From sequence record AP017925.1: a DNA stretch of 64,000 nucleotides; one strand, 5' to 3'. Below, in pieces: positions 1,759 to 6,164 of the stretch (position 1 is the first letter of the stretch; every line of letters begins with the position of its first letter). The position numbers and the translations under genes were made by a program. The notes under the pieces were generated by a model that saw only the letters and a list, made by a program, of their open reading frames with translations, had not been told where the DNA came from and did not search any database.

Positions 1759-2394
1759 TCAGCCCTTGGACACCATCGTCAGTGTGATTGCACGACCATC
1801 CGGCAGAAACACGCTTTCACCGAACGTCGGGAACTTGGTTTCCGAGTTCAGGTTGAAGTCTTTGATATCCCGCACCATATACGCCATCACGATCTCGTTC
1901 GTGATATGGAACATACGATCACGCACGTCAGCATAAGGCACGCTGACGATAGTATCACCAAAGTCCTTTACCGTACCTTTGTGGAACGAGAACGACATCA
2001 TGCTGTTCGGCGTGTAGCTGTAGGTCTCACCTACTTCCAGTGCCTTGATCGCTTCGTCGTGGTTCCGGTCTTTAGGCGAGAACCCGCGATAAAGCGTTTC
2101 ACGTACCGGAGGCGGTTGAATGGCTTCGAACACACGCTTGGCTTCGCGCAGTTTCGGCAACAGCGAGTAGTCAGTGACGGTGATCCAGCGTTCCACAGCT
2201 TCGAGGAGTTCTTTGTGCTGAATCAGTTCTCGGACGATGCGTTCGTCCACGTCTTCCTTCTGGAAAGTGACTTGGGGATGGGACCACACCCGGTCTTCTA
2301 ATTTGTCCCACAGTTGTTTGGTCCAGTCGTACACTTCTTCTTGCTCCAGGCCAAGCCCGGGTTGCCCGTCGAGGGACAGAACTTTCAAGCCCAT
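1759..2394 (-). CDS. putative ADP-ribosyltransferase (R-S-E type)
   Basis: TLYRG ... MSFS ... FGESVFLP matches the order and spacing of the ART R-S-E catalytic motifs. Confidence 0.55.
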   Translation of the reverse strand: MGLKVLSLDGQPGLGLEQEEVYDWTKQLWDKLEDRVWSHPQVTFQKEDVDERIVRELIQHKELLEAVERWITVTDYSLLPKLREAKRVFEAIQPPPVRETLYRGFSPKDRNHDEAIKALEVGETYSYTPNSMMSFSFHKGTVKDFGDTIVSVPYADVRDRMFHITNEIVMAYMVRDIKDFNLNSETKFPTFGESVFLPDGRAITLTMVSKG

Positions 2395-2440
2395 GATGAA
2401 TACCTGTTGGTTAGATGATGGCTATAAAATAGTTCACAGC

Positions 2441-2478
2441 GGCATAAAAAGCGGGAGAGGGCACTCACGCCCTCTCCC
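2441..2478 (-). terminator. intrinsic terminator with TTTATGCC tail
   Basis: GGGAGAGGGC/GCCCTCTCCC stem followed on the minus strand by TTTTTATGCC. Confidence 0.8.
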
Positions 2479-2479
2479 T

Positions 2480-3240
2480 TAGTCCATTGTTTCCCCAAGA
2501 CGCTCCACCAAACGTCAAGAGAATTCAACCGCAAACCAAACATCAGCCGAACGAATACCACGCTTCTATAGTGAGTGTGGGGAGAGGATACGGGCCCATC
2601 TACCTATCTTACCTCTCCCCACTACCTCGCAGGCCACCATCAAGCCTTTTGAGTAAAGTGGTAACAACCCACTCACTACCGACACTGTTACCCGCCTCAG
2701 GACGTAACCTGTGCATTGGGTCAGCTCCCAACTCAATGTCGGAACTACGCTCGTTCTAACGTAGCTTTGCTTTTTACCGCTTACCGAGATAGCGGTGTTT
2801 ACCTCGCCTCATTTGCTCGGGTCTTTGAGGTTTCGCAATTCCATATCCTTTTTTGATAGGCTGGAGGTCTGCAAGAGGTAGAGTTTCATGCCCCGGCTTC
2901 AGCTGATGCACTTTTCCCTACTCGCTCCGCACCCACAGGCTATCCCTCTAAACTAAACACCGACTGTCGCATGGCTGCTACAGCTCCGTATCGCTTGACT
3001 TTAATTGTCGACTCTAAACCACTACTACCTATCAGATCTTTGCGAGGTATGTCGGTCTTACATTCTTGCGATGGGCTTAAGCTACTCTGGTGGAGAAACC
3101 TAATCAGCAAGCTGCCGGTGTAGAAACGATCTAGAGCCGCCTGTCACTCCGAGTGACGGACAGTGTCAATTTAAAAGGATAGTCCACGAGCAATCTGAAC
3201 AAAAACATTCAGAAATGGCTAATGGGACATAACATAGGGA
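2480..3240 (-). ncRNA. candidate large structured ncRNA (~750 nt; GOLLD/ROOL-class candidate)
   Basis: No credible ORF over ~800 bp, bounded by terminators at both ends. Many stems: GTGGGGAGAGG/CCTCTCCCCAC, GGTAAC/GTTACC, ACCGCT/AGCGGT, CTACG/CGTAG, GTCACT/AGTGAC, CTGAA/TTCAG, and GACGTTT/GAGCGTC with G-U pairs on the minus strand. Family identity not verified. Confidence 0.55.
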
Positions 3241-3281
3241 AATATGATAAGGTAACTAGGTATTTACCTACTTATGCAAAC

Positions 3282-3309
3282 AAAAAAATAAAGCGGCCGA
3301 AGCCGCTTC
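3282..3309 (-). terminator. intrinsic terminator
   Basis: AAGCGGC-cgaa-GCCGCTT (cUUCGg loop on minus strand) followed by TTTATTTTTTT. Confidence 0.8.
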
Positions 3310-3311
3310 AC

Positions 3312-3437
3312 TCACCAAGACCAGTGAGCAAGTCCAGCGAGGATCAGTAAGACCACCAACAACTTGATCTTAGTCTTCTGGACCTGTACGTAGAAGTCTT
3401 TGTCCTCTACGAGGCGATCGAACACGGAACGACTCAT
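3312..3437 (-). CDS. small membrane protein (41 aa)
   Basis: Hand translation MSRSVFDRLVEDKDFYVQVQKTKIKLLVVLLILAGLAHWSW*. ATGA overlap with the upstream gene. Below the track length cut-off. Confidence 0.65.
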   Translation of the reverse strand: MSRSVFDRLVEDKDFYVQVQKTKIKLLVVLLILAGLAHWSW

Positions 3438-3852: not shown

Positions 3853-4301
3853 TGTTTCTCTCCTGCGTTTGCCAGTATGGCGGCTGACTTGTTAAATACT
3901 TCTTTGATAACATCCGCGAGCGCCTTCAGGCCGTCGGGAGTATCGACGTGGTAGCTGCCGCAGGCGAAGCCTTTGAACCACTCGCGCGGGCTCGGGCAAC
4001 CACAGTGACCTGCAACGCGCACAACGCGACCGTGGGTAGCGTGCAAAGCTTCTGCGGTATCGACGTCGAGTCCGGGACCTTCAACCATCCAGTAATACCA
4101 GCCGCGAGTGAATTTCCAGCCATGCAGTACGCCCAGTACCGATGTCTTCACTTCACCGGATTGGCGGCGAAGCATATCAGCCAGCCATTCGGGTGGTTGA
4201 CCAGCATCTTCTTGCAGCGTCGGAATACCGGCTGCTTTGAGTTCGGCACGTAGAATATCATCGGTGTCTGCGTGATCACCGGCTCTGTTGGGGAAACCCA
4301 T
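3849..4301 (-). CDS. hypothetical protein (150 aa)
   Basis: RBS GGGAGTAG. Protein-like composition, with WYYW and HCGCP motifs. Confidence 0.75.
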   Translation of the reverse strand: MGFPNRAGDHADTDDILRAELKAAGIPTLQEDAGQPPEWLADMLRRQSGEVKTSVLGVLHGWKFTRGWYYWMVEGPGLDVDTAEALHATHGRVVRVAGHCGCPSPREWFKGFACGSYHVDTPDGLKALADVIKEVFNKSAAILANAGEKQ

Positions 4302-4339
4302 TTCTACTCCCTAAAGTAAGTTAACGGCATAAAAGGAAT

Positions 4340-4592
4340 GCAGGGGGTGGCGAAACCAAGGCTAACCCGTCCCTGATCCCGCCACCCTTCTCCCACACCG
4401 CCCTCACCGCGTGCTCGCGGCCAGAGGACTACATTGGGAAGGCTGCGTCGACAGACGCTCCGGCGGCTAGCGGGCCGCACCATGGCGTCAGCTGTCTTCC
4501 CTGCGTGGGGAGCTTTGCGGCCCGCGATCTCGCGAGGCGCGCTCCCCATCGTTCAGCGCGGGCGAGTCTCTCAATCCCGCCCGCGCCTGAAC
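4340..4592 (-). ncRNA. candidate GC-rich structured ncRNA (~250 nt) at the 3' end of the tRNA array
   Basis: Stems GTTCAG-CGCGGGCG/CGCCCGCG-CTGAAC, GGGGAGC/GCTCCCC, GGGAAG/CTTCCC, a 17-bp GGGTGGCGGGATCAGGG/CCTTGGTTTCGCCACCC hairpin with G-U pairs on the minus strand, and a possible long-range GCAGG/CCTGC pairing. Visibly more GC-rich than flanking DNA. Confidence 0.6.
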
Positions 4593-4610
4593 ACTTCACT
4601 ACAACAATAC

Positions 4611-4718
4611 TGATCCCTCGGGTTAGGATTCGAACCTACGACCTGCGTCTGGTATGGTAGGCCGGCCGCTGAGGACCCGCCTTGGTGACGCCGCTCTGCC
4701 GGACTGAGCTACCGAGAG
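4611..4718 (-). tRNA. tRNA-like RNA with a 37-nt insert in place of the anticodon loop (identity undetermined; ends UCA, not CCA)
   Basis: Acceptor CTCTCGG/CCGAGGG, TA, D-arm GCTC-AGTCCGGCA-GAGC, anticodon stem GCGTC/GACGC enclosing 37 nt (4650..4686), variable region AGGTC, T-arm GTAGG-TTCGAAT-CCTA(A)C. Confidence 0.7.
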
Positions 4719-4733
4719 TATGCTACGGAAAAC

Positions 4734-4809
4734 TGGCTCCAAGGGCTGGGTTCGAACCAGCGACCAACGGCTTAACAGGCCGCTGCTCTACCGACTGAGC
4801 TACCTCGGA
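4734..4809 (-). tRNA. trnN: tRNA-Asn (anticodon GTT)
   Basis: 76-nt canonical cloverleaf: TCCGAGG/CCTTGGA, D-arm GCTC/GAGC, anticodon loop CT-GTT-AA, T-loop TTCGAAC, encoded CCA. Confidence 0.97.
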
Positions 4810-4822
4810 ATACTACTAAACT

Positions 4823-4933
4823 TGGTGCAAAAGGTACGATTCGAACGTACGAAGTCTTTTCCCATCCTTAGATGAGTCACCTTGTGATGATACGGTTGTA
4901 TCTCACTGCCTTAAACCACTCAGCCACTTTCGC
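4823..4933 (-). tRNA. class II (Leu/Tyr/Ser-like) tRNA-like RNA with a 25-nt insert in place of the anticodon loop
   Basis: Acceptor GCGAAAG/CTTTTGC, discriminator A, CCA. Class II-style D-arm TGGCTGAGTGGTTTAAGGCA, T-arm GTACG-TTCGAAT-CGTAC. Stem GTGAG/CTCAT encloses 25 nt (4877..4901) and is followed by a long variable arm. Total 111 nt. Confidence 0.7.
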
Positions 4934-4949
4934 TTGGAAACTACACTCC

Positions 4950-5200
4950 TAGAGCCAGAAGCAAGGCAGCTAACGGCGTCTCCATGACGGTTCTGCTGCC
5001 GCTGCCGAGCTAGTGGCCTAAGGGCTATAGTCTCGCTGCTAACAAATCCATAACTTGAGAGTTGCGCTGATGAACGCTTCTCCCCTACACTTTAACGAGG
5101 ATCATCACTCCTCGCAACTAGAGGCCTTTCGGCGGTAATCCTAACGCTGCCATCCCGGTCAGGGGATGGCCAGCAAACTCGAAGAAAACTAGAGCAGCTA
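4950..5200 (-). ncRNA. candidate structured RNA or leader upstream of the tRNA array
   Basis: Stems GCTG-GCCATCCC/GGGATGGC-AGC, GCC-GAAA-GGC (GNRA loop), GAGGA/TCCTC, and GGCAGC/GCTGCC enclosing CGTC/GACG. No credible ORF. Confidence 0.35.
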
Positions 5201-5288
5201 CTCCAGAGAGTCCTCAAGTGATAGGATACAGATACAGTGTGAGTCTCTGCATGAAATAAAGACAACGTGTATTTTTTTACTCTACTTC

Positions 5289-6164
5289 TTAGTTTGCGCC
5301 AACGAGCCAATTAGCCAAACGCTTGATACCCGCGAGCAACTTGCCGAAGATACCTTGCGGTTTGGACGTAGTAGCAGCGCTAACGGCTTCAGGTTGAATT
5401 GCTGGCTCTGCAACCACTGCTTTCTCTTCAGAGGCAGGAACTTCCGGCTCCTGTTCTACAGGATCGCGAAGTACGATCCCGTCACCGAAGGCCGGGTACG
5501 GTGCTGCGTCGTAGTCTTCCTGATCCATCAGAAGCTCGTTAGTCCACTGGTACGTGGCGTGGAAGCCGCTGAGGATATCGAGCCACCAAACGCTACCAGT
5601 CGGAGACGGCGTGATGGCGATCTTGTGCTCAGTGCCTTCTTCGTCAGTGACGATCAGGCAAGGCATGGCCAGCCACTTGTACTGCTCCTTGATTGTGCGG
5701 CTCTTGAATGCAAACTCCACACGGATGTCGTGCGGCTTCAGGAAGGTGTTTTCGAACTGCTTGTTTACCTTAAGCGAGCGGAACACCGATTCGTATTCTT
5801 GCTTCGCCAGCGCCTCCTTGTTCTTCACGCAGGAGATGCCGAGGTTGCACACAGCATCGCAGAACACGAACCAGCGGTTGAAGCGCTCGGCGAATTCCTT
5901 TGGCGCGAGTTTTTCCTTCTTGATGGCGGACAGTTGGTCGGCCACGATGTGCGGCAAAGCAGCCACGAACTCGTCGCGGTCGAAGTAGTAACCGTCGGCT
6001 TGTGCACGCTCTTCATCGATGTTCTTCTGGACTTCTTCCAGCGTACCGAGGATGCGGTTGTAATTCGGATCGATGTGCTCGATCGCTGCAATTTCTTCAT
6101 TCACCGCAGCCACGCCTGCTGCAATGTCGTCTTGTACTTCCTTCGGGATATTGGAATCACTCAT
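5289..6164 (-). CDS. hypothetical protein (~291 aa)
   Basis: Start moved to MSDSNIP (6164) because the longer track ORF runs through a terminator. Codon usage matches other phage genes. Confidence 0.8.
   Translation of the reverse strand: MSDSNIPKEVQDDIAAGVAAVNEEIAAIEHIDPNYNRILGTLEEVQKNIDEERAQADGYYFDRDEFVAALPHIVADQLSAIKKEKLAPKEFAERFNRWFVFCDAVCNLGISCVKNKEALAKQEYESVFRSLKVNKQFENTFLKPHDIRVEFAFKSRTIKEQYKWLAMPCLIVTDEEGTEHKIAITPSPTGSVWWLDILSGFHATYQWTNELLMDQEDYDAAPYPAFGDGIVLRDPVEQEPEVPASEEKAVVAEPAIQPEAVSAATTSKPQGIFGKLLAGIKRLANWLVGAN

What the first reader, a model, noticed from the sequence alone, without database searches (positions are those of the whole stretch)
4340..4592. Unassigned GC-rich ~250-nt multi-stem RNA directly 3' of the tRNA array
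Seen: at least five stems, with G-U pairs only in the minus-strand fold (e.g. a 17-bp terminal hairpin with several wobble pairs). A possible GCAGG/CCTGC long-range closure encloses three subdomains. It starts after a tRNA-style spacer and ends at TTTTATGCC. I found no tmRNA (TTCGA T-loop plus CCA), RNase P (GAGGAAAGTCC) or SRP (GGAAGGAAGCAG) signature. The overlapping 81-aa ORF is low-complexity Arg/Gly/Ala. Inference: a novel ncRNA class.
Basis: partly seen in the sequence, partly recalled or inferred. Interest (0 to 1): 0.75.

Follow-up and report, generated by a model that had tools for sequence, protein, structure and literature searches.

The report
Structured RNA ending a phage tRNA operon
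The GC-rich stretch is a real, conserved, highly folded non-coding RNA of about 280 bases at the end of the tRNA operon of Ralstonia jumbo phage RP31; it matches no described RNA family, its last hairpin is the operon's terminator, and its function is unknown.

Summary
The window is Ralstonia jumbo phage RP31 (identical in RP12). The finding lies in a 990-nt gene-free stretch on the minus strand: structured leader, atypical tRNA, tRNA-Asn, tRNA-like element, conserved AU-rich spacer, then the GC-rich RNA (about 4612-4325).

The RNA has five helical domains and 16 G-U pairs. It folds better on the minus strand (-153 kcal/mol, z -5.3) than on the plus strand (z -3.6).

Homologues exist only in two other lineages: phages FLC1-1B/FLC4-3B and one IMG/VR contig. 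The helices are kept through compensatory changes. ORFs are not conserved. Rfam and ARAGORN give no family.

The long terminal hairpin followed by TTTTATGCCG is one of about 18 copies of the phiKZ-type terminator punctuation in this window. The GCAGG/CCTGC closure is not conserved.

Best reading: a new, narrowly distributed RNA family that forms the 3' module of a phage tRNA transcript. It is probably released as a stable RNA, like T4 RNAC/RNAD or tRNA 3'ETS RNAs. The main rival is a purely cis-acting terminator and stability element. Function is unknown and interest is moderate. A larger conserved RNA of about 790 nt lies 1 kb away.

The parts
4325..4612 (-). Whole candidate RNA: from the spacer after the last tRNA-like gene to the terminator motif (about 280 nt)
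   Evidence: Fold z -5.3. Homologous and collinear in FLC4-3B/FLC1-1B and IMG/VR contig 3300049460_000312.
4599..4611 (-). AU-rich spacer, identical in all three lineages. It has the same style as the spacers between the tRNAs and is a likely endonucleolytic processing site.
   Evidence: Invariant columns. The spacers between the tRNAs share the GUUU..GUAG pattern. Processing itself is inferred.
4550..4593 (-). P1 hairpin (19 pairs in RP31). The loop core GAGAGAC (4572-4566) is invariant.
   Evidence: One G-C to C-G exchange and G-U to G-C changes between lineages.
4506..4548 (-). P2. The inner hairpin (4540-4531/4526-4517) is shared with relatives. The outer 8-pair extension (4548-4541/4513-4506) is specific to RP31 and RP12.
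4436..4501 (-). P3 domain, the most variable part. It is branched in RP31 and one long irregular hairpin in the relatives.
   Evidence: Compensatory changes between the FLC phages and the IMG/VR contig.
4400..4429 (-). P4 hairpin (12 pairs).
   Evidence: Four of nine modelled pairs changed on both sides across lineages.
4337..4399 (-). P5 long hairpin: outer stem 4399-4392/4344-4337, AGAA internal loop, inner stem 4387-4369/4362-4345. The apical motif GGGUUAGCC (4368-4360) is invariant. P5 doubles as the terminator hairpin.
   Evidence: All pair cells paired, with conserved G-U pairs and U-A/C-G, A-U/G-C and G-U/A-U exchanges.
4325..4334 (-). TTTTATGCCG: the T-rich tail of a phiKZ-type terminator. 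It contains TATG, the phiKZ late-promoter core, 28 nt before the ATG of the next gene (4301).
   Evidence: TTTATGCCG occurs 10 times in the window against 0.31 expected. There are 18 TTTATGC sites, nearly all directly after a GC-rich hairpin. phiKZ terminator motif: PMC10914365. TATG promoter: PMC4666361.
4611..4718 (-). Context: tRNA-like gene with D arm, T arm and a roughly 37-nt hairpin-bearing insertion in the anticodon loop. It lies directly upstream of the RNA in RP31 and the FLC phages and is absent in the IMG/VR relative.
   Evidence: Not called by ARAGORN or the Rfam tRNA model.
4734..4809 (-). Context: tRNA-Asn (GUU), the only canonical tRNA.
4826..4933 (-). Context: atypical long-variable-arm tRNA with a 25-nt anticodon loop and an encoded CCA.
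   Evidence: Rfam tRNA 35.8 bits.
4934..5250 (-). Context: conserved structured leader of the same transcription unit.
   Evidence: 69 predicted pairs, 18 with changes on both sides.
5267..5278 (-). Context: A-rich ..TACAC element about 22 nt before a conserved ATG (G at 5250). It resembles the phiKZ middle-promoter layout and is the putative operon promoter.
   Evidence: Conserved in the three lineages. phiKZ motif from PMC4666361. Promoter function is inferred.

Best explanation
The region is the 3'-terminal, non-coding, highly structured module of the phage's tRNA transcription unit, read on the minus strand.

Transcription probably starts at a phiKZ-middle-type promoter near 5250. It runs through a structured leader, an atypical tRNA, tRNA-Asn and a tRNA-like element. 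It then makes this RNA of about 280 nt and stops at the RNA's own last hairpin (P5) followed by UUUUAUGCCG, the phage's standard phiKZ-type intrinsic terminator.

The invariant AU-rich spacer after the last tRNA(-like) gene is the likely cut site of the host tRNA-processing endonucleases. That cut would release an RNA capped by P1 at its 5' side and by the long P5 hairpin at its 3' end, so it should be stable.

I think it then acts in trans as a ligand- or protein-binding RNA. The contact surfaces would be its invariant single-stranded motifs: the P1 loop, the P5 AGAA internal loop and the P5 GGGUUAGCC apex.

Shown: conservation, structure, strand, non-coding nature, terminator motif, absence from known families.
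Inferred: promoter, processing, stability, trans action.
Unknown: the partner and the biological role.
For: Identity and context: the window is RP31, identical in RP12. No CDS is annotated between ORF131 and ORF132.

Structure: z -5.3, -3.6 and -5.4 in the three lineages. There are 16 G-U pairs, and the minus strand is favoured by 18-22 kcal/mol.

Conservation: about 79% mean column identity over the RNA, with indels that are not multiples of three. Within the first 20 kb of the window, only the neighbouring large-RNA region (2438-3065) is found by megablast, and the gene downstream of the RNA differs between lineages.

Covariation, 3' domain: 98% of pair cells paired, 6 pairs changed on both sides, against 0-1 in slid controls and 1 of 500 shuffles.

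Covariation, 5' part (FLC phages versus the IMG/VR contig): 100% paired, 8 pairs changed on both sides, 0 of 500 shuffles.

Terminator: hairpin plus TTTATGC is genome-wide punctuation, matching the phiKZ terminator motif of a hairpin followed by TTAT (PMC10914365).

Spacer: invariant and tRNA-spacer-like. In the IMG/VR relative the RNA follows tRNA-Asn directly.

Loop motifs are invariant while the adjacent stems covary.

Precedents: T4 RNAC and RNAD come from the tRNA region (PMC3014915). The E. coli 3'ETS-leuZ RNA is cut from a tRNA operon by RNase E (bioRxiv 10.1101/2021.04.25.441314).
Against: - There are no expression data, so a discrete stable species is not shown.
- Only three lineages (three to four distinct sequences) exist, so covariation statistics are weak. 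They partly rest on structures derived from the same alignments.
- The P3 domain and the P2 and P4 loops differ between lineages.
- P5 is needed as a terminator anyway, which could explain part of its conservation.
- The covariance model of P4+P5 finds nothing in 50 other phiKZ-like phage loci.
- No partner is identified.
Confidence: 0.5

Rival explanations
1. A purely cis-acting 3' trailer. P5 is an unusually long terminator. P1-P4 are a structured barrier that protects the tRNA precursor from 3' exonucleases or times its processing. After processing the fragment has no function of its own.
For: - P5 plus UUUUAUGCCG fits the phage's terminator punctuation (PMC10914365).
- P3 and the P2 and P4 loops are poorly conserved.
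- The family is narrow.
- No partner or target was found.
Against: - The other terminators in the window are simple hairpins of about 8-11 pairs. This one is preceded by about 200 nt of conserved helices.
- The loop and internal-loop motifs and the spacer are invariant while the stems covary.
- A more distant relative ends its tRNA cluster with no such trailer (L143), so a trailer is not a general requirement.
Confidence: 0.3
2. It is the 3' domain of one bipartite large RNA. The conserved leader (5250-4934) would be the 5' domain and the tRNAs would sit in a linker, as in some GOLLD RNAs.
For: - Leader, tRNAs and this RNA are collinear and conserved together in all three lineages.
- Both flanking parts are structured with covariation.
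- GOLLD has separate 5' and 3' domains with a variable linker that sometimes holds phage tRNAs. GOLLD and ROOL lie near tRNA islands in phages (bioRxiv 10.1101/2024.12.08.627333; PMC5737381).
Against: - There is no Rfam GOLLD or ROOL match, even at E<=10.
- A search for conserved leader-to-RNA complementarity gave only 13 short windows, none with supporting covariation and no more than chance would give.
- tRNA processing would separate the two parts.
Confidence: 0.1
3. A small protein gene: the 81-aa Arg/Gly/Ala-rich ORF at 4304-4549.
For: The ORF exists with an ATG start.
Against: - Its start lies in an RP31-specific insertion.
- The relatives have different ORFs with other starts, lengths and stops.
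- Indels are not multiples of three.
- No Pfam or PHROG match.
- The ORF runs through the terminator.
Confidence: 0.02
4. A DNA-level or relic element: a captured GC-rich host fragment, decayed tRNA genes, or a replication or packaging site.
For: The G+C content (69.6%) is well above the window's 52.5%. The region lies beside aberrant tRNA-like genes.
Against: - Conserved G-U pairs and strand asymmetry point to RNA.
- Compensatory changes are present.
- There is no match in GTDB genomes by pattern or in PLSDB plasmids by blastn.
- No tRNA signal lies inside the region.
Confidence: 0.03

Closest known systems
Phage T4 RNAC and RNAD (small RNAs from the T4 tRNA region)
   Same: Small non-coding RNAs encoded in, and transcribed from, a lytic phage's tRNA region. 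Their function is still unknown (PMC3014915, PMC9697503).
   Different: No sequence or Rfam link was found. This RNA is about 280 nt, very GC-rich, has five helical domains and carries the operon terminator. Expression of the RP31 RNA is not shown.
E. coli 3'ETS-leuZ (RNA from the 3' external transcribed spacer of a tRNA operon)
   Same: The segment lies between the last tRNA and the operon terminator. In E. coli it is released by RNase E and acts in trans (bioRxiv 10.1101/2021.04.25.441314).
   Different: 3'ETS-leuZ is short and works by base-pairing with small RNAs. No target complementarity was found here, and the size and fold are far larger.
GOLLD and ROOL large ornate RNAs
   Same: Phage or prophage RNAs of unknown function that often sit beside tRNA islands. 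Some GOLLD RNAs carry tRNAs between their two domains (bioRxiv 10.1101/2024.12.08.627333; PMC5737381).
   Different: There is no match to their Rfam models. This RNA alone is about 280 nt, against about 580 to over 800 nt. No pseudoknots or multimer contacts are shown.
phiKZ conserved intrinsic terminators and UTR-derived ncRNA candidates; PAK_P3 ncRNA1 and ncRNA2
   Same: The hairpin followed by a TTAT-type tail is the same terminator design (PMC10914365). In those phages, short structured RNAs delimited by such terminators or processed from 3'UTRs (about 210 and 120 nt in PAK_P3) accumulate during infection.
   Different: Those RNAs flank protein genes and have no detected similarity to this one. 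Here the hairpin is about 26 pairs with internal loops, not a simple stem, and the unit is a tRNA operon.

Membership tests
tmRNA (standard or permuted) | tRNA-like domain with T arm and 3' CCA plus a tag reading frame; detected by ARAGORN or the Rfam tmRNA models | tested here: not met
   ARAGORN finds no tmRNA in the window. Rfam gives none at E<=10 in RP31. In FLC4-3B there is only a 12.7-bit, E 5.5 noise match to tmRNA_permuted.
RNase P RNA, SRP RNA, 6S RNA | Match to the Rfam covariance models | tested here: not met
   No match at gathering score or at E<=10.
GOLLD / ROOL | Match to the Rfam GOLLD or ROOL covariance model | tested here: not met
   No match at E<=10 over 4100-5400, over 2300-3400, or over the FLC4-3B locus.
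GOLLD / ROOL | Located by tRNA islands in phages or prophages | tested here: met
   Directly downstream of tRNA and tRNA-like genes in three phage lineages.
GOLLD / ROOL | Size above about 500 nt with multistem junctions and pseudoknots; homo-oligomeric cage | tested here: not met
   About 280 nt, five serial helical domains, no pseudoknot detected. Oligomerisation cannot be tested with these tools.
RNA derived from a tRNA-operon 3' trailer (T4 RNAC/RNAD, 3'ETS type) | Same strand and same transcription unit as the tRNAs, between the last tRNA and the terminator | tested here: met
   Same strand. No terminator-like or promoter-like site lies between the tRNAs and the RNA. The terminator motif is at its 3' end.
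RNA derived from a tRNA-operon 3' trailer (T4 RNAC/RNAD, 3'ETS type) | Accumulates as a discrete processed RNA | not testable with these tools
   No transcriptome of RP12, RP31 or the FLC phages was found.
phiKZ-type intrinsic terminator | GC-rich hairpin followed by a TTAT-containing tail, recurring across the genome | tested here: met
   P5 followed after 2 nt by UUUUAUGCCG. There are 10 exact TTTATGCCG sites against 0.31 expected, and 18 hairpin-linked TTTATGC sites. Motif described in PMC10914365. Termination itself was not measured.
Riboswitch or cis-regulatory leader of the downstream gene | Conserved association with the same downstream gene | tested here: not met
   The gene downstream in RP31 (ORF131) is not alignable with, and is annotated differently from, the small gene downstream in the FLC phages and the IMG/VR contig.
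Protein-coding gene | Reading frame conserved among homologues | tested here: not met
   ORF starts, lengths and stops differ in all three lineages. No Pfam or PHROG hit.
Y RNA-like (YrlA) | Rfam YrlA model at gathering score (69 bits) | tested here: not met
   The only hit scores 29.8 bits. It spans the T arm of tRNA-Asn and the D arm of the next tRNA-like gene (4688-4769), outside the finding.

The most novel reading that the evidence does not exclude
The leader (5250-4934), the embedded tRNAs and this RNA are one bipartite ornate RNA with tRNAs in its linker. This would be an analogue of GOLLD unrelated in sequence. Together with the roughly 790-nt conserved RNA 1 kb downstream, it would form an island of large structured RNAs in nucleus-forming jumbo phages, with a role linked to phage tRNAs or translation.
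Probability: 0.1. Interest if true: 0.8.

Novelty: new member of a known kind. Interest (0 to 1): 0.45.

Why it matters
Phage tRNA regions repeatedly carry structured RNAs whose roles are still unknown (T4 RNAC/RNAD, GOLLD, ROOL). This adds a compact, well-delimited example from phiKZ-related jumbo phages. These phages transcribe their genomes with their own polymerases.

The RNA has clear borders (a processing-type spacer and the phage terminator), so it can be mapped and probed directly. Its value is limited by its narrow distribution (three lineages) and the lack of any functional clue.

The wider observation may matter more than the single element. Three conserved structured RNA segments and a family of tRNA-like genes with enlarged anticodon arms sit within 3 kb.

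Tried and rejected
Homologue searches:
- Exact and gapped DNA patterns were run against IMG/VR, GTDB genomes and JGI metagenomes. Only RP12 and one IMG/VR contig are true homologues.
- The 109 hits were not examined individually; a 15-base pattern is expected to match many contigs by chance. The more specific patterns recover only RP12 and the one contig. L113 is a chance match.
- The four metagenome hits lie in stretches that read as ordinary protein-coding sequence; only about 40 nt match, no tRNA is nearby and the flanks are not homologous.
- blastn against phages finds only RP12, RP31 and the FLC phages for this part. blastn against plasmids finds nothing.
- The covariance model of P4+P5, run against 50 other phiKZ-like loci, gave no credible hit; the best was E 0.076.

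Function and partner searches:
- Neighbouring proteins have no Pfam domain that suggests a partner such as a reverse transcriptase, Ro or a nuclease. The RP12 annotation around the locus is almost all hypothetical proteins.
- Similarity between this RNA, the leader and the large RNA is only short chance words.
- Intermolecular pairing between the leader and this RNA: an unrestricted duplex search was uninformative. The conserved-window search found nothing above chance.
- A tag-like short frame in the leader made me consider a tmRNA. I rejected this because there is no tRNA-like domain at its ends and no ARAGORN or Rfam support.
- I considered a CsrA/Rsm-type sponge (GGA motifs) by eye and rejected it: the count seems no higher than the base composition would give, and most motifs lie in stems.

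Full report
IDENTITY AND SETTING

The window is 100% identical over its first 20 kb to Ralstonia phage RP31 (AP017925, from base 124001) and to RP12. These are phiKZ-related jumbo phages of Ralstonia solanacearum (PMC5468394). The finding lies in a stretch of about 990 nt (4302-5288) with no annotated CDS, between ORF131 and ORF132 of RP12. Everything in it reads on the minus strand.

From 5' to 3' the stretch contains:
- a conserved leader (5250-4934);
- an atypical long-variable-arm tRNA with a 25-nt anticodon loop (4933-4826; Rfam tRNA 35.8 bits);
- tRNA-Asn (4809-4734);
- a tRNA-like gene with a roughly 37-nt insertion in its anticodon loop (4718-4611), which neither ARAGORN nor Rfam calls;
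- a 13-nt AU-rich spacer (4611-4599);
- the GC-rich RNA;
- TTTTATGCCG (4334-4325), 24 nt before the ATG of ORF131.

OBSERVATION

The description is accurate.
- The minus strand folds to -153 kcal/mol (z -5.3; no shuffle out of 200 as good). The plus strand folds to -130.5 kcal/mol (z -3.6).
- A fold restricted to the helices shared with relatives costs only 3 kcal/mol more than the minimum. It has 104 pairs, 16 of them G-U. The mirror structure on the other strand is 18 kcal/mol worse.
- G+C is 69.6% against 52.5% for the window.
- There are five helical domains: P1 4593-4550, P2 4548-4506, P3 4501-4436, P4 4429-4400, P5 4399-4337.
- The GCAGG/CCTGC closure appears in the RP31 minimum-energy fold only.

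RELATIVES

blastn against 50,697 phage records finds the region only in RP12, RP31 and the Ralstonia phages FLC1-1B and FLC4-3B. The FLC phages are proposed as a separate genus, with 35% coverage and 77% identity to RP12 genome-wide (PMC11530567).

A profile search of 53 loci of phiKZ-like phages, fetched through a neighbouring virion protein, added one more lineage: IMG/VR contig 3300049460_000312, 283 kb.

Pattern scans of IMG/VR, GTDB genomes and JGI metagenomes added nothing real. Neither did blastn against plasmids or a covariance model of P4+P5 run against the other 50 loci. The family is therefore confined, as far as can be seen, to one small clade.

Across the three lineages the RNA is collinear, with 79% mean column identity and indels of 1, 2, 3, 7, 10 and 14 nt. 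The gene downstream of it differs between RP31 and the others. In the IMG/VR relative the RNA follows tRNA-Asn directly, so the tRNA-like gene is not part of it.

STRUCTURE IS CONSERVED

Each lineage folds on its own into the same series of hairpins.

For P4+P5, on an alignment fitted to a covariance model:
- 98% of pair cells are standard pairs, against 46-63% when partners are slid by 1-3 columns;
- 6 pairs changed on both sides, against 0-1 in the slid controls and 1 of 500 shuffles;
- five G-U pairs in P5 are kept, and one G-U becomes A-U.

For the spacer through P3, comparing the FLC phages with the IMG/VR contig:
- 100% of cells are paired, against 35-48% in slid controls;
- 8 pairs changed on both sides, 0 of 500 shuffles. 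One three-pair helix in that count is probably an alignment artefact.

RP31 differs by an extra outer helix on P2 and a rearranged, branched P3.

The single substitution there in the IMG/VR contig keeps that local pair.

Caveats. There are only three to four distinct sequences. The structures were derived from the same alignments. The tool's own notes warn that related sequences can beat shuffles without any structure. The slid controls are the stronger evidence.

BORDERS

The 5' spacer is identical in all lineages. It has the same GUUU..GUAG style as the spacers between the tRNAs, which suggests the same endonucleolytic processing. This is inferred.

The 3' end is not private to this RNA.
- TTTATGCCG occurs 10 times in the window against 0.31 expected.
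- TTTATGC occurs 18 times, almost always directly after a GC-rich hairpin at a gene end.
- This is the terminator design mapped in phiKZ: a hairpin followed by a TTAT tail (PMC10914365).
- The motif also contains TATG, the core of phiKZ late promoters with the G as start (PMC4666361), so it may also restart transcription for ORF131.
- P5 with its outer stem ends 2 nt before the T run. P5 is thus the operon terminator, although at about 26 pairs with an internal loop it is far larger than the other terminators, which have 8-11 pairs.

Upstream, a conserved A-rich ..TACAC element lies about 22 nt before a conserved ATG at 5250. This resembles the phiKZ middle-promoter layout (PMC4666361). It is inferred.

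NOT CODING, NOT A KNOWN FAMILY

The 81-aa ORF starts inside the RP31-specific insertion. The relatives carry different ORFs. There is no Pfam or PHROG match.

Rfam 15 gives nothing for the region at gathering score. At E<=10 it gives only microRNA-type noise on the P5 hairpin. ARAGORN finds no tmRNA. The flanking proteins are orphans with no domain that would suggest a partner.

MECHANISM

Most likely (0.5): a stable RNA released from the 3' end of the tRNA precursor. Its 5' end would be made by cleavage in the spacer, and its 3' end by termination at P5. It would act through its invariant unpaired motifs: the P1 loop, the P5 internal loop and the P5 apex, which stay constant while neighbouring stems covary.

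Main rival (0.3): a cis-only terminator and stability module.

Smaller rivals:
- the 3' domain of a bipartite GOLLD-like RNA with the tRNAs in a linker (0.1). I found no conserved complementarity between the leader and this RNA beyond chance;
- a small protein gene (0.02);
- a DNA-level or relic element (0.03).

COMPARISON

It works like the small RNAs RNAC and RNAD of the T4 tRNA region, whose roles are unknown (PMC3014915). It also works like the RNase E-released 3'ETS of the E. coli glyW-cysT-leuZ operon (bioRxiv 10.1101/2021.04.25.441314). It shares the tRNA-island address of GOLLD and ROOL (bioRxiv 10.1101/2024.12.08.627333; PMC5737381). It is not a member of any of these by the tests available. 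It is best called a new, narrow RNA family of a known kind.

SLIP

Noticed in passing
window 2440-3235, minus strand: A conserved non-coding region of about 790 nt, unannotated in RP12 and the FLC phages. It has no ORF over 90 aa. It is the only part of the first 20 kb found by megablast in the FLC phages (76% identity). 507 of 925 alignment columns are invariant, and most indels are not multiples of three. There are 224 predicted pairs, 21 changed on both sides. Fold z is -3.9. It starts near a TATG and ends in a canonical hairpin plus TTTTTATGCCG. No Rfam match, even at E<=10. It is a candidate large structured RNA and may be more interesting than the finding itself..
   Followed up: partly
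window 4934-5250, minus strand: The leader of the tRNA unit is conserved in all three lineages and structured: 69 predicted pairs, 18 changed on both sides, including a long-range helix between its 5' end and an invariant internal segment. No Rfam match..
   Followed up: partly
window 4611-4718 minus; L001 2770-2881; L143 21374-21484 and 21027-21113: A family of tRNA-like genes with normal D and T arms but an anticodon loop enlarged by a hairpin, followed by an ACCA-containing tail. The cloverleaf is kept through 12 pairs changed on both sides. It is present in RP31, the FLC phages and a more distant phiKZ-like contig, and absent in the IMG/VR relative closest to the FLC phages. ARAGORN and the Rfam tRNA model do not call it in RP31 or the FLC phages..
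   Followed up: partly
window 4826-4933, minus strand: An atypical tRNA with a long variable arm, an encoded CCA and a 25-nt anticodon loop. It is found by Rfam (35.8 bits) but not by ARAGORN, and it is not annotated in RP12 or RP31..
   Followed up: no
window, 18 sites (for example 1334, 2448, 6247, 10042, 14835, 20750, 27115, 37420, 41917, 46686): A GC-rich hairpin directly followed by TTTATGC(C/T)G punctuates gene ends on both strands. It matches the phiKZ terminator motif and contains the phiKZ late-promoter core TATG, so it may act as a terminator/promoter couple.; PMC10914365, PMC4666361.
   Followed up: partly
L001/L002 2894-3258; L115 15308-15476; window 4734-4809: The canonical tRNAs of this clade are mostly of the GUN-anticodon set: Asn in all three lineages, Asp and Tyr in the relatives, plus Gln. 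Asn is the only one kept in RP31 and RP12..
   Followed up: no
RP12 record 116135-117075 (L174 16136-17074), outside the window: Another unannotated gap of about 940 nt between ORF106 and ORF107 in RP12. Not examined..
   Followed up: no
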